From positions 474,886 to 538,885 of the forward strand of contig NW_002060955.1 of the NCBI RefSeq assembly GCF_000150275.1: a stretch of DNA of 64,000 nt. The letters are read 5' to 3'. Source of the stretch: Trichoplax adhaerens. Lineage: Eukaryota > Animalia > Placozoa. This document shows positions 3,451-38,521 of this stretch, in pieces (the first letter of the stretch is position 1; each line of letters opens with the position of its first letter). The position numbers and the translations under genes are program-made. The notes beneath the pieces were generated by a model. It was not told the DNA's origin. It did not search any database and saw only the letters and a list, made by a program, of their open reading frames with translations.

Positions 3451-4229
3451 GGTAGTTTTTTTTTATTTATTTATATATAACACTAACATATATATAACAT
3501 ATATATATCGACAATAGTTTGATCATCCTGATGTAACAGATGATTGGTAATAAGCACTAACTGGGTGTGGCTCAGCCACTTACATCGGGAAACTACCTTG
3601 TCGCTGTTGTTACTCCACAAGTTGCCTCAACATTTAGCTGCTGCTATTTCCATCAGGTTTTCTCTAGCCATTCTTACTCCGACGGTAAGCATCGCTTTAT
3701 TTTGTTGCATTATAAGCTATGATAGAAACTTGCAAACGTGTACAGTATATACAGATGTACGTATAATCATGGACTACTAAATTACATGTACATCTAGTAG
3801 TCCATAGTTGACATATTCCATGCTCTTTCAATCGACGTGGTTATCAAAACTAACATTCTATCGATAAACCCACATTCGCTGTCTAGTCGTCATGATACCG
3901 ATCAAGACTCATTCACTCTTGACAGGATCATAAATCAACTGCAATTCATCATCATCTTACAGCGATGAAAACACTTTGAATCTTTTTCCCCCTCTGTTTA
4001 TCATCTTCAGGATGACGTCTATATTTTGTTGTAGCTATTCTGCAACCCAGCGTACGTACATTTGAAAAGATGAATTATATTTAGTGATTGCTCGATAAGC
4101 GATATTATACCACGCCTATGAGTAAACTCAATAACGACGCCTGAAAATTTTCATGCTTCCAATATACACAAAATATATTTCAATAATGCTTAGTTAGGAT
4201 AGCAACCGGTTTTATTCGTATCAAATTAG

Positions 4230-4960
4230 TAATAATCGCCTAACTAGTAGATAAATGGAATGATGCGATTTTAAATGTTTATTATGGTTCATTTTAATCC
4301 CTAACACATAGTTGATACTTGTGATAAGCAATTGAAGTCGATCGTCTAACGACTGGATAGATAAAATAATATCACTTTTGATGTTTATTACGGGTCATTT
4401 TAATCATTTAGTTGGTAATTATAGTAAGCAATCGACATCTATTAATTACCTAACGGCTAGATAGATGGAATGAAGCTACTTTAGATGCTTATTTATTATG
4501 AATCATTTTAATCATTTAGTAAGTATTTGTGATAAGCAGTCGACGTCTATTAATTATCGAACGGCTAAATAGGTGAAATGATACAATTTTAGATCTTTAT
4601 TATGGATCATTTTTATCATTCCGTCAGTAATTGTGGCTAGCAATTGACGTCTATTATCTAACGGCTGGAAAAATAAAATGATACCACTTTAGATATTTAT
4701 TATAAATTTTTTTAATCATTTGGTTGGGAACTGTGATTAACAATCGATGTCTATTAATTATCCAACGATTAGATAGGTGAAATGATGCCATTTTAGACGT
4801 CAGTATACAGAAGTATGGATCATTTTAAATATTTAATCGGCGATTGCAATAAACAGTTAATGCCGATCATTGAACGCCTAGACAAATGAAATGATACCAT
4901 TTTAAATAGATGGCATGGGTTATTTTAGATATTTAAACGATATGAACCATCAGGCTAATT
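4230..4960. repeat. Degenerate tandem repeat, about 110-120 bp unit, upstream of EPHX2 A; relic copies at about 17440-17900 upstream of B
   Basis: aaatgat....ttttagatgtttattatggatcatttta recurs about six times. Confidence 0.8.
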
Positions 4961-29732: not shown

Positions 29733-32193
29733 CACAATTTTTGAACATAATAACTGAAACCTGATTCGATATCTAATGATACAAAAACACTTACAGTAAA
29801 TACTAAAAGATTTACCAAATATTTTTAAAGCCGGTTATTGCCTAATTAGTAGAAAGGTTTTAATTCAGAGAACTAAAATGATAATACACTAACTTGCACT
29901 CTACAGACTCTGAAATGTACATGATGCAAGTTTTGGCATGAATAAAAGATCATAACCTGCGAATTATTTACAATTTATAATACGTTAATAACTAACAGTT
30001 CATATTATTAATCAAGGTAGTCAATACGACATCAATCTAACGGCATTGATAAACATCCAGGCTGAGATCGATAGAAAGCCCGTATTGACATTATTCAATT
30101 TCACGAATAAATACAGCAGTTGCTGAATATGCGTGTGGTCTGTAAATCAGGAAGTAATTTAATAAGGAATCTAGCGTTAAATACTGTTAAACAGTTCACC
30201 ACCACAATAGAAATAAATGACATCAGTCCAAAGTTAGCATCTAATGCATCGCATAATCTCTGTATAAATATACTGGACTTTACATTTATAGTCAATCATG
30301 ATCATTTAATATTGACGAAAGCAAATGAATGAGAAATTGGATTTCTTCAGTATCTAGTCCTTAATAATACAATTCAAGATAAATAATTATAGAAGTAGGA
30401 GATATGAATATTAGTAATTTATTACCGTAGTTATCAGAATACTTGTATGCATAAAAATCTGTTATGAGACGAATAAGAAAATATGGCGTAAAAACAGAAA
30501 CACCTGAAATATGGATAGGATTAGGCAGTGAATATATAAATAGGTATCTGAAATCATTCTGCCATAGTGCCAAAAATAGTGCTTTCGATTAATTTACTTA
30601 GCCCATATATTAATATGTATCGACTTAGATATTATGCTTACGAGTGATTATTGATATTGATTTATAAAAAGATCAACTGTAAGAATTGTAGGGAAAGATT
30701 AAAGTCAGCAATTATCAAATGTGCATCCATCTTAACGATCTGTCGTGACTAATACCCTAAAACGACAAATGATGCAAATATTATATCAATTTAGGCCAGA
30801 TCCATTGTTATCCTCTTGACAAGATTGATCAGTGATAGGTGAAACTTTGAGAGACTCTTCATAGCGTCCGGTTTTATAAAGAGATTTTAATTCTTCAATT
30901 TTCATTCCAGTTTAAGAGTCCAATCGGTTTAAAGACAAATTCAATTTCATTTCGACGAAGTTTATAACAATCTTATGTCCGCTCTTATATAAATAGGAAT
31001 TCTAACTTGTTTTCTTGTACATACTAGGGTCTTAAATTTCGTTTTAGATGCATTAATAGGAAAAAATAGAACTAAAACTAAGATAAAAATACGGTAGTTT
31101 ATACCGACATCTAGCATATAATCTGATTATTTTAAATATACACAACGGACAGTAGCACTAGCGATACGTTGATACTAAAGACGGTGTCTACCTAATAGTG
31201 TCGAGTTAGAGATTTGCTCCATTTTGATAACTTAAATTTTGAGTTAGTGATTGTGAACTCAAATGGCTTAGAACCCACTCGCCACACTGGCACTGTCGAT
31301 ATCAAATCATGCTTAGAGTACAGTCTAAATTCAGGCTTAGAGTGTACTGTAGGTTGCTACAATATTTTCATGAGGCAACATCATTAAAGGAATCGGATTT
31401 TCACTGTAATTACTTAATAGGACATGTGCTAGGTTTATAAGCATATGCATCGAGTAAATCGAGGGGTTCTTCTTCTTGCTAGTTTATTGTAGAAACAGCT
31501 ACGGTTTATTTTTCCTTGTAATAAAATTGAACACGGTTATATAAATCTCGATAGTCTGATTTATGTTGGAGCCTTAGAATAAGCTTACTACACGATATTT
31601 AAGCCAAAGCAGTCGAACGAGAATTCAGAACGAATATACGTGTACTGTTTATATTCATAATGCTAATTTGCTGAATCTCTTGATATACGATGACTAAAAT
31701 TTATGCTATTTCGGAAGATTGGTAAATTGATTTATTATAGGGTCCGTAAAATAGATACAACCAGACTCCAAATAAGTATGCAAAAAGAGAAGGCAATAGT
31801 AAAATTAATACTAGTAAATTTTTGATTGCATTTAACAAATCAAGTCTAGTTTGTTTTCCTCTTTCATCTCGTAGAGGCTGTACAACTGCACACTACACTC
31901 GATAATTGATATACAAATTAGCTGAAAAATTACTTTATGACTGATGATAGTCTTAATACAGAATGTAAAAAGTATTAAATTTGCTTAAGTTTTTTACTTC
32001 ATTTATAAAGAAATAGAATTTAATCGATTTCAAGTAGTTGTTAAATAAAGCGCAATATCGACCACATGTACGAATACAGTTCCGTTCTTAATAGGATTAA
32101 TAGTTATAATTAATTTCTCAATCTATAACACCGTACTTACTATTCGAAAGACAAGCATTACACTGAAAAATATGCCGTTACGCAACAATATTT

Positions 32194-32450
32194 TCATGTT
32201 GTGGTAGGCTTGATAGCCAAAACAATATCGTTCCTATTTATTTGTCGTAAAGCTGCTTGAAGCTGATCAACATTTACATTTGGATAATTTTTTTCACACC
32301 ACTTGTTGAGAATTTTCATCGCTCGGTCAAAAACCTTACTTTCTTCATCTTTAATACTATCAACATCGATGGATTGATCCAAAGTTGCAGCCAATCTTGT
32401 CCAATCCGAACCAATTGTATTTGCAATTTGAAAAAAGTGCTCCTTTGGAT
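32194..32450 (-). CDS. Death domain exon (ankyrin/FADD-type DD pattern)
   Basis: Matches the DD pattern IA..IG.DW..LA..L...I..I..E...A..IL..W...L..AL..I.R.DIV. The exon begins at a splice acceptor, not an ATG (the ORF track start is a TTG). Confidence 0.85.
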
Positions 32451-35400
32451 CTATAACGTTACATTAATATCGCAGATAAATTGAAATACAAACAATGAAA
32501 CAAGATATACTCTTAAATGAAACTAATAACCGATATTAAATGATAGCTTGTAAATGCTCGACTTTGCCATATTGATCGAATGCGAAATATAAAATATAAC
32601 AAACTTGAGCTGTACAGTATATGTATCGTGTATGTAAAAGTAGCCGGAGTGCACAAGTAGAATCTAATGAATCGCGTACAGGTTGTTTGGTTAACTTGTA
32701 ACTAATATCGTAAGCATTAACAACATTGAACTATTCGTACTTTCTAAAGATGCATGCAATGATCATATTCTTTTAAGGGGAGTAGATGGATAGAGAGAAT
32801 AAAGAAGTATGTGTAAGTCATGCACGTATTTTCACTGATGCTTTACGAAATCCAATTATTATTATAATGCATAAACTGGATATCAATTTGTTTTCATCTA
32901 CAGCAAAAAACTAACATAACCACTACTCGATCTATATTCTGTACCCGGTTCAATAGCACCTACCGTAAATATTGCATGTTCGGTAGTCGTATTTAATTAA
33001 TAAAAACTGCATGCATAAGCAACAACTTATATTGCTACTGCATAATATAATTGCGATGCTAATTCGTTTATTTCGACATTATTATTTCAAATATAATCAA
33101 TTTTCGTTTGTTGATTCAAGCATTTTAGAAAGTAATCAAAACATAATGATGTAGCTGTTATATCTTTACTACGTTACTAACATATTAATTGATAGAAGTA
33201 ACATTGATTTAGATCTTTCGTTTTGCACGTTATATGTATTCGTATAACTACTTGTTTTCTGTTTAAGATCGTTCAATTCTAATGGCTGGAAAGCTGTCAA
33301 GTCTTATATTGGTAAGAATGATTGATGTTTCTTAATGAAAAGAAATAATAAGGTTTCCTTACAGATTAGGACTTCAATTTAAAAATGATCTATTATCTTG
33401 GTGGTTGGCAAAGTTTTCATCGTGTAAAGCTACTTCAAAGCTCATTCTATTGAATATTAAGTGTTGTCAAGCTGAAACCAAATAAAATTCTATATTTATA
33501 TATTATTATCTTTGTCACTGATGATGTACGATGACCAGAATTTGAAGTATTGATATCATCCATCTAATAATGATATTGAACAAATCTAGAATACAAAATG
33601 ATAAAAAAGGCATTTCCCTTGCTGATACTGTACATGCTATTCTTCCCTTGATTGACGAGTTTTAGAAGCATGAATTGTCATAGTTGCAGATGCAAGAATA
33701 CGATTTGATTCTGTGTGAATATTTATTATACGATTTTATTCTACTTCTGTATTCGTATTACTTGAATGAAATTTGTTTGTTATGCTGACTAAACGTTAAC
33801 CTTTTAATAATTCATTTCTCTTTATATGATTATCTGCTAATGACTGAATATTGACGATAATGCTCTATCAACTTATGGGTGTTCGATTTATAGTTGATAG
33901 AATAAGCTATTGCAACCTTATAGCTAATTAGTAATGGTTATGTCTAGTTATTGAAGAATAACTAAAGATTCGATTTTAAAACTATGAAGGATAGGACGAA
34001 TGGATAGCCTTTCGACTAGACGAACATGTTTAGACACACCTCTGTCTACTAATCGCGATTGACTATTTAATTTGCAATTTTAGAGTTATTAAGGTTTGGA
34101 TATAGGTGATATAAAGAGTCATAGACTTGTTACCTGGAACCGTTATGACGTATATAAAATTGCAAATTAGATTAATCAAAAGCATGATCAAGAATTGCCG
34201 TGAATACATCATATACAATTTAAGTTAAGTGAAGGAAAACATAGTTCTGTTGTCAACCAAAGCATTATACTCGTTTTGAGTAATGTATTTGCACACGTGA
34301 ACTGTTTATGTTGCATTCATTATAACCGGTGATAAAACAACATAAAAGTAGCGTTTTAATGAGTTTGAATTATTGGATCCCTTTATGGTTGAGACATTGG
34401 CTACATGTTTTAACTCTAGTATGAATAAATTGATTCAAGATGATGTCGTATTTGGACAAAGTTACTTCAAAACTTTTTATCTAAAGTAAAAACAGTAATT
34501 AAAATCGATCGCCGCTTAATTTTATCATCAACTTGCCCCTTCAATTTAGCAATATAGTATTGGCTTTACCGACTAATCTACTCGAACAGACTATACTTTT
34601 TCTTATGTTTGAATATCATTGTTTACACGGAATGATCGTTTATTGAATTCAGATACATTTGCGAACTTGAGCCAGTAAGTCAGTGTGCAATATTATCCAA
34701 TTAGTCAACTGATTCAATGCTGTATATAGACTTACCTTGGCGCTGTTGTCTGCTATTATCTTGTGCTTTTCCATATTGACTTGAGTGTTCGCTTTCTTCT
34801 TCTATTGATCAAAACAAGAGATGAGAATGTGTTGGACAGATGCAAGACTGCTACAGTAGTAATCAATTACACAAATCACCTAGTGATGATGGCGATTGGT
34901 CGTCGATGACTGTTTGATTGTCTGCATATTGAGCCAAAAGCTGTCGAATGATGTTGGCTATTTCCAATGGAGAAGGCTCCTTCTCGTTTTCTTGCAATTG
35001 ATTGGAACAGTAATTAATTTGTTTCTCATCCTCCACAATTTGAGGATGACTCTCTCCGTAGACATTGCGTAGACTGTTAATGGACTTTCGATATAATGCG
35101 ATTGCTTGACGATAATTCGACAGTTTACAATTGACTACAGCTTGGCTTCGATACAACTGGGCAGTATGAAGATGGTTCTCACCTAGCGTTACTAAAAAGA
35201 TTTGCAGTGACTTGTTTAACATTGATAGAGCATCGTCATACTTGCCTTGATCTCTATAGACACCACCAATACTGTGATAAGTCGAAGCAATACTTGGATG
35301 ATTGTCACCAAGTTGTGTTAGTTGAATCTTCAGTGACTTGTTATACATCGATAGAGCGTCGTCATACTTGCCTTGATGATTATAGACACCACCAATGCTG

Positions 35401-37481
35401 TGATAAGTCGCAGCAATACTTGGATGATTGTCACCAAGTTGTGTTAGGTCAATCTTCAGTGACTTGTTATACATCGATAGAGCGTCGTCATACTTGCCTT
35501 GATCTCTATAGACACCACCAATGTTGTGATAAGTCGTAGCAATACTTGGATGATTGTCACCAAGTTGTGTTAGTTTAATCTTCAGTGATTTGTTATACAT
35601 CGATAGAGCGTCGTCATACTTGCCTTGATCATTATAGACACCACCAATACTGTGATAAGTCGCAGCAATACTTGGATGATTGTCACCAAATTGTGTTAGT
35701 TGAATCTTCAGTGACTTGTTATACATCGATAGAGCGTCGTCATACTTGCCTTGATCATTATAGACACCACCAATGTTGTGATAAGTCGCAGCAATACTTG
35801 GATGATTGTCACCAAGTTGTGTTAGTTGAATCTTCAGTGACTTGTTATACATCGATAGAGCGTCGTCATACTTGCCTTGATCATTATAGACACCACCAAT
35901 GTTGTGATAAGTCGCAGCAATACTTGGATGATTGTCACCAAGTTGTGTTAGTTGAATCTTCAGTGACTTGTTATACATCGATAGAGCGTCGTCATACTTG
36001 CCTTGACGATTATAGACACCACCAATACTGTGATAAGTCGTAGCAATACTTGGATGATTGTCACCAAGTTGTGTTAGTTGAATCTTCAGTGACTTGTTAT
36101 ACATCGATAGAGCGTCGTCATACTTGCCTTGATCTCTATAGACACTACCAATGTTGTGATAAGTCGTAGCAATACTTGGATGATTGTCACCAAGTTGTGT
36201 TAGTTCAATCTTCAGTGACTTGTTATACATCGATAGAGCGTCGTCATACTTGCCTTGATCTCTATAGACACCACCAATGTTGTGATAAGTCGTAGCAATA
36301 CTTGGATGATTGTCACCAAGTTGTGTTAGTTGAATCTTCAGTGACTTGTTATACATCGATAGAGCGTCGTCATACTTGCCTTGATCTCTATAGACACCAC
36401 CAATGTTGTGATAAGTCGTAGCAATACTTGGATGATTGTCACCAAGTTGTGTTAGTTGAATCTTCAGTGACTTGTTATACATCGATAGAGCGTCGTCATA
36501 CTTGCCTTGATCATTATAGACTTGCCCAATATTTGTATAAGTTACAGCAATACTTGGATGATTGTCACCAAGTTGTGTTAGTTGAATCTTCAGTGACTTG
36601 TTATACATCGATAGAGCGTCGTCATACTTGCTTTGATCTCTATAGACACTACCAATGTTGTGATAAGTCGTAGCAATACTTGGATGATTGTCACCAAGTT
36701 GTGTTAGTTGAATCTTCAGTGACTTGTTATACATCGATAGAGCGTCGTCATACTTGCCTTGATCATTATAGACTTGCCCAATATTTGTATAAGTTACAGC
36801 AATACTTGGATGATTGTCACCAAGTTGTGTTAGTTGAATCTTCAGTGACTTGTTATACATCGATAGAGCGTCGTCATACTTGCCTTGATGATTATAGACT
36901 TGCCCAATATTGCTATAAGTTACAGCAATTTTTGGATGATTGTCACCAAGTTGTGTTAGTTGAATCTTCAGTGACTTGTTATACATCGATAGAGCGTCGT
37001 CATACTTGCCTTGCTTATCATAAATACTTCCAATGTTAAGATAAGACTCACTCATATTGATATCTTCATTTTCTGACCATTCTGATTTTATTCCAAGTGA
37101 TTTGTTAAAATCTTTTAAAGCTCCATTCAAATCACCTTGCAATTCTTTAATGCACCCTTGTCTATCAAAGCACTTTGCAAATCTCACTCTATCTTGTAGT
37201 TGTTCGGCTAATATCTTCGCATTTCTTCTCCATTTATCAGCTTCTATCAGTTTATATTGATTTAAATAACAATCGGCTATGTCCAGATAAATATCGTGTT
37301 CAAGTTGATGGTGATGATTATTATTACTATTCTTGGACATAGATTGGATTTGAGTAACAGCTTCTTTGTAATGTAATAGAGCTTGTTCATAATCGCCTTC
37401 TTCAAAGCATTTCATACCTTTTTTGTGGATAGATTCAGTTTCATCAAGGATAGTCAATTTTGTGGACTCATATGCCCCCAT
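32194..37481 (-). CDS. N-myristoylation motif + TPR array (42-aa kinesin-light-chain/NPHP3-type repeats) + C-terminal death domain, about 974 aa
   Basis: Exon 1 37481-34880 (the 872-aa ORF up to CTA G|gtgatt); exon 2 34801-34736 (caatag|...CAA G|gtaagt; EEESEHSSQYGKAQDNSRQQRQ); exon 3 32450-32194 (ttatag|; DPKEHFFQIANTIGSDWTRLAATL...AMKILNKW...LQAALRQINRNDIV). Both junctions are phase 1 and in frame. The TPR ORF is certain; the splice to the death domain is inferred and extra small exons cannot be excluded. Confidence 0.8.
35237..37010 (-). repeat. Coding tandem repeat, 14 x 126 bp
   Basis: The anchor catacttgcc lies at 35237 and 37001, 1764 bp apart (14 x 126). Units are nearly identical in DNA. 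Confidence 0.97.
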
Positions 37482-38521
37482 GTTTCAGTTTATAACAAGA
37501 CTGAAAGCATACACGGTAATTTGGGGGGAAATAAACACTAGTACTTTAATCGATAGAGGTTGCAACTTTAATAGAGATGCGATTGATTATCGTAATCGCT
37601 TTACAGTATATGATTGGGCCAAACTGATGCCTTCTATTTAATGTCCAGATTTCAAAATCTATGCTAGTTCACAATGTGCTCAAATCGGCCAAATTGGATA
37701 CGCCCTAAGAAGTTAACGGTCATCAATTCTAATTATTTGAAAATTATTCATTAGATATTAATGAAGCGGTAATAGATTAAAAGCGTGAAGACATTCTTTC
37801 CATACCTTACTTCTCTTTATTTATTTTTCAATATCAATAAGCTGCGTCATCGCTATTATTATAAATAGAAGCTTACTCATTAGCATAACTATAGTATTGA
37901 TTAAGTAAAATGCAGTGTTAAGTATAAAAGATGTTTGCTATCATATTAATAACTTCGTAAATTGGCTTAATGGCTTGATAGACTAATGTTAAACACTTTT
38001 GTTATACAGTTCATCAATTAGAGAAATTCTACTCAAAGAATATTGGGTAACTTCAATTATTTGCGATCATTGCCTTATAATTCTACTAAGTATAATCAAC
38101 ATCATTTTATTATAATCCTGCATATGTTAATTTATTTTTGCGTCGACAGTCGATTTGGCGGCATATTGCTCATGTTTACAGTTTTGTGCATAATACATGC
38201 TATAACTACAATATAATCATTCATCATTATTTATTAAAGAAGTTGTTCTACTTTACCATCCGAGATAGCTGTCTTCTATACAACTCGAAATCGAGGATGA
38301 AGGAGAGGGACGAATTATTATCAATCCGTAAAATGAGGGATAAGTGTTCTTAAGAGTTACTTAAAGAGATTTAGTGCCCTGATACGTGGCTCAGGGATAA
38401 GATTTGTACATTCAGCCTTCTCGTTAGTTTGTTATAGAGCTGATCTGTGTCACAATAATATGGAAAGACTAATATTGGGATAATATAGAGATAAGATAGG
38501 AAGATTACATACAAATGGATT

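What the first reader, a model, noticed from the sequence alone, without database searches (positions are those of the whole stretch)
32194..37481. Hidden three-part receptor-like gene: myristoyl anchor, variable TPR array, death domain
Seen: the 872-aa ORF and a 66-aa ORF 2.5 kb downstream join through a 66-nt linker exon with consistent phase-1 GT-AG junctions. The protein starts MGAYES and ends in a death domain; no P-loop (NACHT/NB-ARC), transmembrane segment or signal peptide is visible. Established: MGxxxS is the N-myristoyltransferase consensus; death domains nucleate Myddosome/DISC/PIDDosome-type assemblies; TPR-sensor NLR-like proteins normally place an NTPase between sensor and effector. 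Inference: a membrane-tethered cytosolic sensor that couples a diversifying TPR ligand surface directly to death-fold signalling without an NTPase switch, i.e. a candidate innate-immune or allorecognition receptor class in an early-branching animal. I cannot confirm from here that the architecture is undescribed.
Basis: partly seen in the sequence, partly recalled or inferred. Interest (0 to 1): 0.85.

Follow-up and report, generated by a model that had tools for sequence, protein, structure and literature searches.

The report
Switch-less TPR–death-domain gene in Trichoplax
This is a real, expressed three-exon Trichoplax gene joining a long, hypervariable TPR repeat array to a death domain; it is a GTPase-less offshoot of a large placozoan TPR–Roc–COR–death-domain family rather than a separate receptor class, and its proposed lipid anchor is not shared by its closest relatives.

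Summary
The three-exon model on the minus strand (37481-34880, 34801-34736, 32450-32194) is in frame. Both predicted GT-AG junctions appear in transcript contigs from two studies. Exon 3 is a death domain by Pfam, PDB sequence search and an AlphaFold model. No NTPase, transmembrane segment or Walker A motif is present.

The genome fits Trichoplax adhaerens. At least 89 loci share this gene's N-terminal cap. Many relatives carry a Roc-COR GTPase between the TPR exon and a death domain. One such gene uses a 95%-identical copy of the linker microexon. The window gene sits in a nine-member clade that lacks Roc-COR, probably by exon loss. A Trichoplax sp. H2 model (RDD37135.1) already shows TPR plus Death without an NTPase.

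The 15 TPR units are 94% identical in DNA. They vary only at unit positions 10, 13, 14, 17, 20, 21 and 39; six of these map to canonical concave-groove positions.

Gly2 is copy-specific: the three closest paralogs read Met-Ala (GCG, not GGG), so myristoylation is not a family trait.

Sensor or immune function is inferred, not shown. The joined protein was never built or searched.

The parts
37482..37602 (-). 5' UTR (approximate). An in-frame TGA lies at 37487-37485, two codons upstream of the ATG.
   Evidence: Contigs of X1 and X6 end at 37592 and 37602. Sequence read. The context TGAAACATGG is conserved in paralogs.
37476..37481 (-). Start codon ATG and codon 2 GGG (Gly2), the proposed N-myristoylation site. 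The closest paralogs have GCG (Ala).
   Evidence: No difference is reported at this codon in any of the four runs laid.
34880..37481 (-). Exon 1 (2602 nt, ends in phase 1): N-terminal cap, TPR array and tail.
   Evidence: ORF. Joint 34801<->34880 in X1 and X6. The donor is conserved in L066, L067 and L072.
37077..37481 (-). N-terminal cap, aa 1-135 (degenerate TPR-like helices). It is shared by at least 89 loci of the genome.
   Evidence: Pfam TPR_1/TPR_2/TPR_12 weak hits. 129 genomic matches. Homologous N-termini occur in Trichoplax ROCO proteins.
35187..37076 (-). Array of 15 units of 42 aa (TPR_12 / KLC / NPHP3 type), aa 136-765. Variable positions are 10, 13, 14, 17, 20, 21 and 39 of the unit.
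   Evidence: TRF gives period 126, 14.6 copies, 94% matches at 35205-37045. Unit table. Comparison with paralog arrays. A unit HMM covers aa 136-765.
34881..35186 (-). Tail of exon 1, aa 766-867: a last degenerate TPR and a conserved non-repeat segment.
   Evidence: Aligns to residues 342-442 of the H2 ROCO protein P0036 (RDD39303.1), which is the segment before its Roc domain, at 44% identity and E 1.6e-22. Conserved in L066, L067, L070 and L072.
34802..34879 (-). Intron 1 (78 nt, GT..AG). It contains the stop (TGA at 34865-34863) that ends the unspliced 872-aa ORF.
34736..34801 (-). Exon 2, a 66-nt phase 1-1 microexon encoding an acidic, Ser/Gln-rich linker.
   Evidence: Joints on both sides. 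Conserved with its splice sites in L066 and L067 (66 nt) and L072 (63 nt, an in-frame deletion). Copies at 95% identity at C1372:122664-122751, downstream of a COR exon, and at 93% at C1003:3697-3783.
32451..34735 (-). Intron 2 (2285 nt, GTAAGT..AG). Its last ~330 nt (about 32451-32790) are a conserved non-coding block upstream of the DD exon.
   Evidence: Joint. 94-96% identical to the paralog L071 throughout. The 3' block is conserved at 69-78% in old paralogs, including the ROCO-type L014, with indels that are not multiples of three.
32194..32450 (-). Exon 3: death domain (Pfam match about 32209-32439) and stop codon TGA at 32196-32194.
32000..32193 (-). 3' UTR (at least). Transcript contigs run on unspliced past the stop and beyond 32000.
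   Evidence: X1 record 1 and X8 record 25.

Best explanation
**What it is (shown).** The locus is an intact, transcribed and spliced three-exon gene of Trichoplax adhaerens. It encodes a 974-residue soluble cytoplasmic protein made of these parts:
- a TPR-like N-terminal cap;
- 15 nearly identical 42-residue TPR units;
- a short conserved tail;
- a disordered acidic, Ser/Gln-rich linker encoded by a 66-nt microexon;
- a C-terminal death domain.

**Where it belongs (shown).** It is a member of a placozoan-specific multigene family with at least 89 loci sharing the N-cap. Family members combine the TPR exon with different 3' modules.
- Many have a single large Roc-COR (ROCO GTPase) exon between the TPR exon and a death-domain exon. 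At least one (C1372) uses a 95%-identical copy of the linker microexon. Another (L014) shares the conserved intron-plus-DD-exon cassette.
- The window gene belongs to a nine-member clade that goes straight from the TPR exon to the linker and DD.

**Origin (inferred).** The clade most likely arose by loss of the Roc-COR exon. The tree is midpoint-rooted only, so the direction of change is not established.

**Mechanism (inferred).**
- The TPR solenoid is a binding surface. Its specificity is set by six hypervariable helix-A positions (canonical TPR positions 2, 5, 6, 9, 12, 13) plus one position in helix B.
- The array diversifies by unit duplication, loss and conversion, which also keeps the scaffold homogeneous.
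- The death domain plugs the protein into homotypic DD assemblies. The genome has at least 110 DD exons.
- Without a nucleotide switch, the protein would act in one of two ways. It could be a sensor or adaptor whose DDs are clustered by a multivalent ligand. Or it could be a switch-less partner, decoy or modulator of the ROCO-DD and NB-ARC paralogs.

**Myristoylation.** Gly2 makes N-myristoylation possible for this copy, but it is a derived, copy-specific feature.
For: - **Gene model.** Both junctions are seen in contigs of two studies. Splice sites and phase are conserved in three divergent paralogs, with one in-frame 3-nt indel in the microexon. An in-frame stop lies upstream of a conserved start context.
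- **Domains.** TPR_12 x15 and Death. DD fold confirmed. Nothing else fits: the unit HMM covers aa 136-765, and there is no Walker A motif or TM segment.
- **Organism.** The genome is 105.63 Mb. Homologs are TRIADDRAFT and Trichoplax sp. H2 proteins.
- **Family size.** 129 N-cap matches, at least 110 DD exons, 50 COR matches.
- **Architecture of relatives.** H2 proteins with the same N-cap are TPR-Roc-COR-Death (P0036, P0167, P0229). Genomic paralogs L061, L062 and L064 have Roc+COR ORFs between TPR and DD.
- **Clade.** The N-cap tree puts WIN, L071, L069, L070, L072, L068, L066, L067 and L073 in one clade (81/76). That clade sits inside a 92/93 clade with the ROCO proteins P0036 and P0026.
- **Shared modules.** The tail of exon 1 aligns to the pre-Roc segment of P0036. 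An X1 contig joins the end of a COR ORF (C1372:120709-120738) to this microexon sequence, and a 95% copy of the microexon lies 1.9 kb downstream of that COR exon. The DD exon and its conserved upstream intron block are shared with the ROCO-type L014.
- **Array.** Period 126 nt, 94% identity. The variable columns 10, 13, 14, 17, 20, 21 and 39 are the same seven in the independent array L070 and recur in L071 and L069. Outside them pN is well below pS: 0.0075 against 0.023 here, and 0.03-0.06 against 0.12-0.21 in paralogs. Unit numbers are 10, 15, 16, 17, 26, at least 28, 30, 33, 34 and 35 among paralogs.
- **Constraint.** The DD versus ROCO-type L014 gives dN/dS 0.24. The N-cap versus close paralogs gives about 0.5.
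Against: - No functional data of any kind exist. Binding, assembly, and any immune or allorecognition role are inference from domain types and evolutionary pattern.
- Between the window gene and its 95%-identical paralog, the DD changes at about the intron rate (dN 0.067 against 4.5-5.8% intron divergence). This fits relaxed constraint as well as diversification.
- Two clade members (L066, L067) have truncated DD exons.
- The direction of change (loss of Roc-COR rather than gain) rests on a midpoint-rooted tree of about 150 columns with moderate support.
- The hypervariable columns do not show pN clearly above pS in this gene (0.32 against 0.32). Formal positive selection is therefore not demonstrated.
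- The runs are contigs flagged only as 'RNA?'. X2 and X8 hold unspliced contigs across both introns, so isoform proportions are unknown.
Confidence: 0.6

Rival explanations
1. The protein is an N-myristoylated, membrane-tethered autonomous receptor. It represents a separate innate-immune or allorecognition receptor class that couples a diversifying TPR surface directly to death-fold signalling, and by design needs no NTPase.
For: - MGAYESTK fits G-{EDRKHPFYW}-x(2)-[STAGCN]-{P} (sequence; pattern from my knowledge of PROSITE PS00008).
- Gly2 is unchanged in contigs of all four runs, including the second organism label.
- Four other paralogs also start MG with S or T at position 6.
- There is no NTPase in the gene or the window.
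- The array has hypervariable concave positions.
Against: - The three closest paralogs (89-95% identical N-caps) read Met-Ala (GCG). Most of the family starts MA, MP, MT or MD. The anchor is therefore a recent single-base state, not part of the design.
- The gene is nested among Roc-COR-bearing relatives and shares its linker microexon with one of them (C1372) and its DD cassette with another (L014). It is a derivative of a switch-bearing family, not a separate class.
- Myristoylation and membrane localisation were not testable here.
Confidence: 0.15
2. It is a non-immune scaffold or adaptor. A TPR solenoid with a C-terminal death domain would be used for cytoskeletal, trafficking or apoptotic scaffolding, as in ankyrins, kinesin light chain or NPHP3. 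The repeat variation would then reflect only unequal crossing-over.
For: - The units are TPR_12 / TPR_NPHP3 / KLC type.
- The closest solved DDs by sequence and fold include the ankyrin DDs.
- Public annotation calls the relatives 'Nephrocystin-3' or 'Kinesin light chain'.
Against: - Those names are automatic transfers based on the repeat type.
- The gene has no one-to-one ortholog outside Trichoplax among the best 150 of 1408 hits in 1.84 billion representatives. Every hit that matches the whole N-cap and was looked up is Trichoplax or unnamed.
- It belongs to a fast birth-and-death family in tandem clusters.
- Variation is confined to the same seven columns in independent arrays, while the scaffold is under purifying selection. 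Housekeeping scaffolds do not usually behave this way.
Confidence: 0.15
3. It is a decaying remnant. After losing Roc-COR the gene is a transcribed but functionally relaxed derivative on its way to pseudogenisation, or its main product is the TPR-only 872-aa protein made when intron 1 is retained.
For: - DD dN between the recent paralogs is about equal to intron divergence.
- L066 and L067 have truncated DD exons and L068 a split one.
- X2 and X8 hold contigs that run unspliced through intron 1.
Against: - The reading frame is intact over 2922 nt across three exons. Both splice junctions are used.
- Scaffold columns of the array have pN/pS of about 0.3, and the N-cap has dN/dS of about 0.5.
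- The DD retains all conserved core positions of the family alignment and folds with pLDDT 91.5.
- The unspliced contigs also run deep into intron 2. They look like pre-mRNA or DNA rather than a specific isoform.
Confidence: 0.1

Closest known systems
Placozoan TPR-Roc-COR-Death (ROCO) proteins, e.g. Trichoplax sp. H2 RDD39303.1, RDD45494.1 and RDD43187.1. At least 17 ROCO genes of T. adhaerens with TPR, LRR, CARD and death domains are drawn in Civiero et al. 2014 (PMC4104024).
   Same: - Homologous N-terminal cap, 42-aa TPR_12 units and pre-Roc tail.
- C-terminal death domain.
- One ROCO gene (C1372) carries a 95%-identical linker microexon; another (L014) shares the DD exon and its conserved upstream intron block.
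- Same genome, clustered and fast-evolving.
   Different: - The window gene has no Roc or COR. The TPR exon is spliced across a 78-nt intron straight to the linker microexon.
- It carries many more TPR units (15, against 5-7 in the ROCO paralogs inspected).
RDD37135.1, 'Nephrocystin-3' of Trichoplax sp. H2 (503 aa)
   Same: A predicted protein with the same N-cap, TPR_12 units and a C-terminal Death domain, and no NTPase. The architecture therefore already exists in a public proteome.
   Different: - It falls outside the window gene's clade in the N-cap tree.
- It has far fewer units.
- It has never been discussed in the papers I could search.
STAND/NLR-type receptors with TPR sensors: NB-ARC-TPR of placozoans and Hydra (Kamm et al. 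2019, PMC6321704), Ectocarpus NB-ARC-TPR with 42-aa TPR units (Zambounis et al. 2012, PMC3341825), and fungal NLRs with highly conserved TPR/ANK/WD repeats (my knowledge)
   Same: - 42-aa TPR units kept nearly identical, with variation focused on a few surface positions.
- Copy-number variation, gene clusters and rapid birth and death.
- Death-fold effector domains in the animal examples.
   Different: No NACHT or NB-ARC (or any NTPase) is present. In Ectocarpus each unit is its own exon, whereas here the whole array is one exon.
Repeat-plus-death-domain proteins without a STAND NTPase: ankyrins (ANK-ZU5-UPA-DD), PIDD1 (LRR-ZU5-UPA-DD), NF-kB p100/p105 (ANK-DD)
   Same: A solenoid repeat domain is followed by a C-terminal DD with no nucleotide switch. 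Ankyrin DDs are the best solved sequence matches of this DD.
   Different: The repeats are TPR, not ANK or LRR. There is no ZU5-UPA. This is a lineage-specific multigene family with hypervariable repeats, not a conserved single-copy gene.

Membership tests
Death domain (Pfam PF00531, death-fold superfamily) | Profile match above the curated cut-off over the whole domain | tested here: met
   50.4 bits against a cut-off of 22.6, profile positions 3-83 of 86. 49.4 bits in the genome scan.
Death domain (Pfam PF00531, death-fold superfamily) | Compact all-helical death fold that superposes on solved DDs (six helices in the solved DDs) | tested here: met
   AF2 model with pLDDT 91.5 and pTM 0.81. 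DSSP lists five helical elements, the first of which spans residues 2-23. Foldseek hits: FADD DD TM 0.81 with rmsd 1.3 A, ankyrin-G DD TM 0.87, and the RIPK1, RAIDD and TRADD DDs.
Death domain (Pfam PF00531, death-fold superfamily) | Homotypic DD-DD assembly | not tested
   No complex prediction or experiment was run.
TPR_12 / KLC-NPHP3-type TPR proteins | Tandem 42-aa helix-turn-helix units matching PF13424 | tested here: met
   992 bits in 15 stretches. Period 126 nt. The canonical TPR signature residues map in register onto the unit: Y12=W4, I15-G16=L7-G8, Y19=Y11, A28=A20, Y32=F24, S35=A27 (my mapping).
ROCO proteins | Roc GTPase domain followed by a COR domain | tested here: not met
   No Roc or COR in exon 1, in the introns, or anywhere in the window by genome scan. 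Relatives L061, L062, L064, P0036, P0167 and P0229 do have them.
NLR / STAND receptors | Central NACHT or NB-ARC NTPase with a Walker A motif | tested here: not met
   No such Pfam hit. No [AG]xxxxGK[ST] motif. No NB-ARC hit in the window. NACHT itself (PF05729) was not scanned genome-wide. However, aa 136-765 are TPR units, and the flanks of 135 and 102 residues are too short for an NTPase.
N-myristoylated proteins | Gly at position 2 in an NMT-compatible context (small uncharged residue at 3, Ser/Thr at 6) | tested here: met
   M-G-A-Y-E-S-T-K. The pattern is from my knowledge of PROSITE PS00008, which has low specificity.
N-myristoylated proteins | Gly2 conserved among orthologs and paralogs that share the function | tested here: not met
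   The closest paralogs L071, L069 and L070 have Ala2 (GCG). Only 5 of about 30 distinct family N-termini start MG.
N-myristoylated proteins | Covalent myristate on the protein | not testable with these tools
   Needs metabolic labelling or mass spectrometry.

The most novel reading that the evidence does not exclude
Placozoans run an NLR-analogous surveillance system built on TPR arrays with hypervariable concave faces. In it, switch-less TPR-DD proteins such as this one are working components. They would be autonomous ligand-clustered sensors, or decoy/partner subunits that co-assemble through their death domains with the TPR-Roc-COR-DD and NB-ARC paralogs. This would be comparable to sensor/helper or truncated NLRs of plants. 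Single-base toggling between Ala2 and Gly2 would send individual paralogs to the cytosol or to membranes.
Probability: 0.15. Interest if true: 0.8.

Novelty: new variant of a known kind. Interest (0 to 1): 0.5.

Why it matters
Placozoans lack canonical LRR-bearing NLRs and Toll-like receptors (Kamm et al. 2019, PMC6321704), so how they sense microbes or non-self is open.

This locus shows, with transcript support, that the large placozoan TPR/ROCO/death-fold family also produces members without any nucleotide switch. It also shows that their TPR arrays have the signature seen in fast-evolving receptors of brown algae and, from my knowledge, fungi: near-identical units, variation confined to ligand-facing positions, and copy-number change.

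That gives a natural pair of switch-bearing and switch-less relatives, which share the N-cap, the linker microexon (with the C1372 gene) and the DD cassette (with L014). Such a pair is a clean system for asking what the Roc-COR module adds to death-domain signalling. The locus also appears to be missing from public gene models, so existing immune-gene censuses of Trichoplax may undercount this family.

Tried and rejected
1. **Roc relic in intron 2.** tblastn and a Roc-COR HMM gave weak sense-strand hits at about 32529-32600 (E 0.05 and 0.017). I rejected this. The block is a conserved non-coding segment upstream of the DD exon. It is present also in the ROCO-type gene L014 and in L072, with indels that are not multiples of three. 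It also lies on the wrong side of the linker exon for a Roc-COR deletion scar.

2. **Public gene model for this locus.** Word-indexed searches restricted to the N-cap and to the tail found no related protein of 480-1526 aa. The exact 872-aa ORF is not in the collection. Because of the length window, this shows only that no model of that size exists, not that the locus is unannotated.

3. **Whole-exon-1 search.** It was swamped by generic TPR proteins and told little.

4. **Loose-end sequences of X1 contigs.** They are absent from the window. One was then placed at the end of a COR ORF on C1372. The other (21 nt at 34736) was not followed further.

5. **Coordinate pairing of N-cap, DD and COR hits.** It gives about 15 TPR-to-DD loci without COR, about 13 with Roc/COR between the two, 5 with COR but no DD found, and 56 with neither. 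It is approximate. One 'TPR-DD' call (C1404:942449) turned out to have a Roc hit in between.

6. **Literature.** Searches for TPR-Death, Death-TPR and similar terms and for placozoan TPR or death-domain expansions found no description of NTPase-less TPR-DD proteins.

7. **Fetching more paralog loci.** The C1372 ROCO gene and the L040/L014 gene could therefore not be read in full.

8. **Positive selection.** pN is about equal to pS at the variable columns in this gene. I claim site-specific diversification, not demonstrated omega above 1.

9. **No complex prediction was run.** No DD binding is claimed as shown.

10. **Joined protein.** Every search used single exons by reference.

Full report
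**Scope and constraints.** All searches and folds used single exons given by reference. The joined three-exon protein was never assembled, searched or folded; only its length was computed.

**1. The observation**

The minus strand carries an 872-aa ORF (34863-37481) and a short ORF at 32194-32394. Reading the sequence gives the following structure:

- Exon 1 is 37481-34880 (2602 nt, phase 1), followed by GT.
- Intron 1 is 78 nt and holds the in-frame TGA that closes the unspliced ORF.
- Exon 2 is 34801-34736 (66 nt, phase 1-1), followed by GTAAGT.
- Intron 2 is 2285 nt and ends in a pyrimidine-rich tract and AG.
- Exon 3 is 32450-32194.

The total is 2922 coding nt, or 974 codons.

Contigs of four public runs were laid on 32000-37900.

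- X1 and X6, from different studies, contain joints exactly at 34801<->34880 (skips 78, CT..AC on the plus strand) and at 32450<->34736 (skips 2285, CT..AC).
- X2 and X8 hold contigs that run unspliced through both introns. These may be pre-mRNA or DNA.
- The runs are flagged only 'RNA?', but a spliced form cannot come from genomic DNA of this locus.
- Transcript contigs end near 37592-37602 upstream and run on past the stop codon beyond 32000.

An in-frame TGA lies two codons before the ATG, and the context TGAAACATGG is conserved in paralogs. The ATG at 37481 is therefore the start.

Domain content:

- Exon 3 is a death domain. Pfam Death scores 50.4 bits, E 2.5e-13, nearly full length.
- The best PDB sequence matches are the ankyrin-3/1, FADD and MyD88 DDs.
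- An AlphaFold2 model built on 32 paralogous DDs reaches pLDDT 91.5. It superposes on the FADD DD (TM 0.81, rmsd 1.3 A) and the ankyrin-G DD (TM 0.87), and every top hit is a DD.
- Exon 1 is TPR_12 x15 (992 bits).
- A unit HMM covers residues 136-765. That leaves a 135-residue TPR-like cap and a 102-residue tail, so there is no room for an NTPase.
- No Walker A motif and no hydrophobic segment is present; the maximum Kyte-Doolittle(19) value is 0.72.
- Genome scans place no NB-ARC, Roc or COR match inside the window.

**2. Organism and family**

The assembly has 105,631,681 bases in 1414 contigs. The related database proteins are TRIADDRAFT proteins of Trichoplax adhaerens and RDD proteins of Trichoplax sp. 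H2. The window is therefore T. adhaerens.

The genome holds at least 110 death-domain exons. It also holds 129 matches to this gene's first 140 residues, of which I took 89 as true N-termini.

The closest copies are:

- C1402:576995, 65 kb away on the other strand, with a 95% identical N-cap;
- two copies on small contigs, at 89% identity.

Introns of the window gene and the 65-kb neighbour are 94-96% identical, so this is a young segmental duplication.

**3. What the relatives look like**

An exhaustive profile-free search of 1.84 billion representative proteins with the N-cap gave a Trichoplax sp. H2 protein as best hit. This is RDD39303.1, auto-named 'Nephrocystin-3'. Pfam shows it as N-cap + TPR_12 + Roc + COR-A + Death. 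RDD45494.1 and RDD43187.1 are the same. RDD40856.1, RDD39773.1 and others have TPR + Roc + COR.

In the genome:

- Paralogs L061, L062 and L064 have one or two large ORFs with Roc and COR-A between the TPR ORF and the DD exon.
- The window gene and L071, L072, L066, L067, L068, L073 and L074 have a single ORF. It consists of the cap, 10 to 35 TPR units and a short tail, with nothing else before the DD exon.
- RDD37135.1 (H2, 503 aa) is a public model with the cap, TPR and Death but no NTPase.

Civiero et al. 2014 (PMC4104024) reported at least 17 ROCO genes in T. adhaerens, flanked by TPR, LRR, CARD and death domains. Kamm et al. 2019 (PMC6321704) described 42 NACHT/NB-ARC genes with TPR or WD40 repeats. 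I found no paper that mentions the NTPase-less TPR-DD form.

**4. Relation between the two architectures**

Four results tie them together.

1. *N-cap tree.* In a maximum-likelihood tree, the Roc-COR-less genes WIN, L071, L069, L070, L072, L068, L066, L067 and L073 form one clade (81/76). That clade sits inside a 92/93 clade with the ROCO proteins P0036 and P0026, and further ROCO lineages lie outside it. The root is midpoint only.
2. *Tail of exon 1.* Residues 766-867 align at 44% identity (E 1.6e-22) to residues 342-442 of P0036, the stretch just before its Roc domain. Exon 1 therefore ends where the TPR exon of a ROCO relative ends.
3. *Linker microexon.* One X1 contig carries the microexon sequence joined to 124 foreign bases. 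Those bases are the end of a COR ORF at C1372:120709-120738. A 95%-identical copy of the microexon with its splice sites lies 1.9 kb downstream of that COR exon. At least one ROCO gene therefore uses the same linker exon.
4. *DD cassette.* The DD exon and about 330 nt of conserved intron before it are shared with the ROCO-type gene L014 (DD 68% identical, COR directly upstream) and with L072.

The simplest reading is that the window gene's architecture is the ROCO architecture minus the Roc-COR exon. I put loss rather than gain at about 0.7.

Splice sites and phase of the microexon are conserved in L066, L067 and L072. L072 carries an in-frame 3-nt deletion, which argues that the microexon is coding.

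**5. The TPR array**

Tandem Repeats Finder gives a 126-nt period, 14.6 copies and 94% matches. Among the 13 internal units, amino-acid variation is confined to unit positions 10, 13, 14, 17, 20, 21 and 39.

- The same seven columns are the variable ones in the independent array L070. Under random placement the chance of that coincidence is about 1 in 27 million (my arithmetic). They also recur in L071 and L069, and they are the most variable columns in older arrays.
- Outside these columns pN is well below pS: 0.0075 against 0.023 here, and 0.03-0.06 against 0.12-0.21 in paralogs.
- At the variable columns pN is about equal to or above pS: 0.32/0.32 here, and 0.28/0.19 and 0.27/0.18 in L071 and L069. 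Because the columns were chosen by their variability, this is not a formal test.

I aligned the unit to the canonical 34-residue TPR signature: Y12=W4, I15-G16=L7-G8, Y19=Y11, A28=A20, Y32=F24 and S35=A27. On that mapping, six variable positions are TPR positions 2, 5, 6, 9, 12 and 13 of helix A. From established TPR structures such as Hop and PP5 (my knowledge), these line the concave ligand groove. Their spacing (i, +3, +4, +7, +10, +11) is one helical face.

Unit number differs among paralogs: 10, 15, 16, 17, 26, at least 28, 30, 33, 34 and 35. A homogenised scaffold with hypervariable ligand-facing residues and copy-number change is the pattern described for Ectocarpus NB-ARC-TPR genes, which also have 42-aa units (PMC3341825). 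From my knowledge it is also the pattern of fungal NLR repeats.

**6. The myristoyl anchor**

MGAYESTK fits the NMT pattern. But codon 2 is GGG here and GCG (Ala) in all three closest paralogs.

- Across about 30 distinct family N-termini, most start MA. Others start MP, MT, MD or MN, and only five start MG.
- Ser or Thr at position 6 is a family-wide feature that does not depend on Gly2.
- Gly2 is therefore a derived, single-base, copy-specific state.
- No variant at this codon appears in any of the four runs, including the one labelled as a second organism, so it is not an assembly error.

Myristoylation of this copy is possible; I would put it near 0.4. It is not part of the family's design.

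**7. Constraint**

- The DD versus the ROCO-type L014 DD gives dN/dS 0.24.
- The N-cap versus close paralogs gives about 0.5.
- Between the window gene and its young paralog, the DD has dN 0.067. That is about the same as intron divergence.
- L066 and L067 have truncated DD exons and L068 a split one.

The DD end of these switch-less genes is therefore less secure than the TPR end.

**8. Most likely mechanism (inference)**

The protein is a soluble cytoplasmic TPR solenoid whose concave face binds a variable partner. Binding is coupled through a flexible linker to a death domain that joins homotypic DD assemblies. Lacking the Roc-COR switch, it would be activated by ligand-driven clustering. 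Alternatively it would act as a partner, decoy or damper of the switch-bearing paralogs.

Each is listed with its evidence.

**9. Verdict**

- The gene model is right and now has transcript support.
- The 'new receptor class' reading shrinks to a Roc-COR-less variant of a known placozoan ROCO/TPR/death-fold family, and the architecture already exists in one public H2 model.
- The locus itself seems absent from public protein sets of comparable length.
- Earlier first-reader notes of this scan on other pieces of the genome describe the TPR-Roc-COR-Death/CARD genes and the hypervariable TPR units. I saw them only after reaching the same picture independently.

Noticed in passing
window 32451-32790 (minus strand); L014:1759-2095, L072:565-900, L028:1753-2090: The last ~330 nt of the intron before the DD exon are conserved at 69-78% among paralogs whose coding regions have dS of about 0.8. 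The indels are not multiples of three. This is a conserved non-coding block (splicing control or another regulatory element) that travels with the DD exon as a cassette.
   Followed up: partly
G000:C1372:119761-122751 (not fetched): A ROCO gene whose COR ORF ends at 120738 is spliced, in an X1 contig, to a microexon 95% identical to exon 2 of the window gene (copy at 122664-122751). No N-cap or DD match was listed nearby, so its 5' and 3' modules are unknown.
   Followed up: partly
G000:C1389:264222-273581; also C1413:140215-144221 and C1414:12750013-12757408: On one strand the order is TPR ORF, DD exon, Roc-COR ORF and, at C1389, a second DD exon. This is either two adjacent genes (TPR-DD, then a Roc-COR-DD without its own TPR) or one locus with alternative 3' modules.
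   Followed up: no
L066 and L067 (G000:C1410:8201500-8226300): This is a tandem pair with 35 and 34 TPR units and an intact microexon with splice sites. Only truncated, duplicated pieces of the DD exon and its upstream block remain (8218042-8218792, 8216045-8216216, 8202837-8203054). The DD module is decayed.
   Followed up: partly
L071:about 4150-4570 (G000:C1402:~580850-581270): An assembly gap (run of N) covers the end of exon 1, intron 1 and most of the microexon in the closest paralog. The '1385/1386-aa open frame' reported there is an artefact of reading through N.
   Followed up: yes
window 32295-32341: The X1 contig that carries the exon 2-exon 3 joint differs from the reference at nine positions within 47 nt of the DD exon. 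X2 shows two other differences there. This looks like a gene-conversion tract, a divergent allele or a paralog-derived contig.
   Followed up: no
G000:C1402:1487770-1488250: A fourth copy of the DD exon with its upstream intron lies 1 Mb away on the same scaffold, 93% identical. No N-cap match is listed nearby.
   Followed up: no
P0143 (TRIADDRAFT_62488, 385 aa): This T. adhaerens protein has the same N-cap and clusters with the ROCO protein P0026. UniProt names it 'CARD domain-containing protein', yet it shows no Pfam hit at E 1e-6. It suggests a cap-plus-CARD member of the family.
   Followed up: no
window 32006 and 34736: Unexplained loose ends remain. X2 and X6 contigs leave the reference at 32006 (73-93 foreign bases, in the 3' UTR). 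One X1 contig has 21 foreign bases before 34736, and they are absent from the window.
   Followed up: partly
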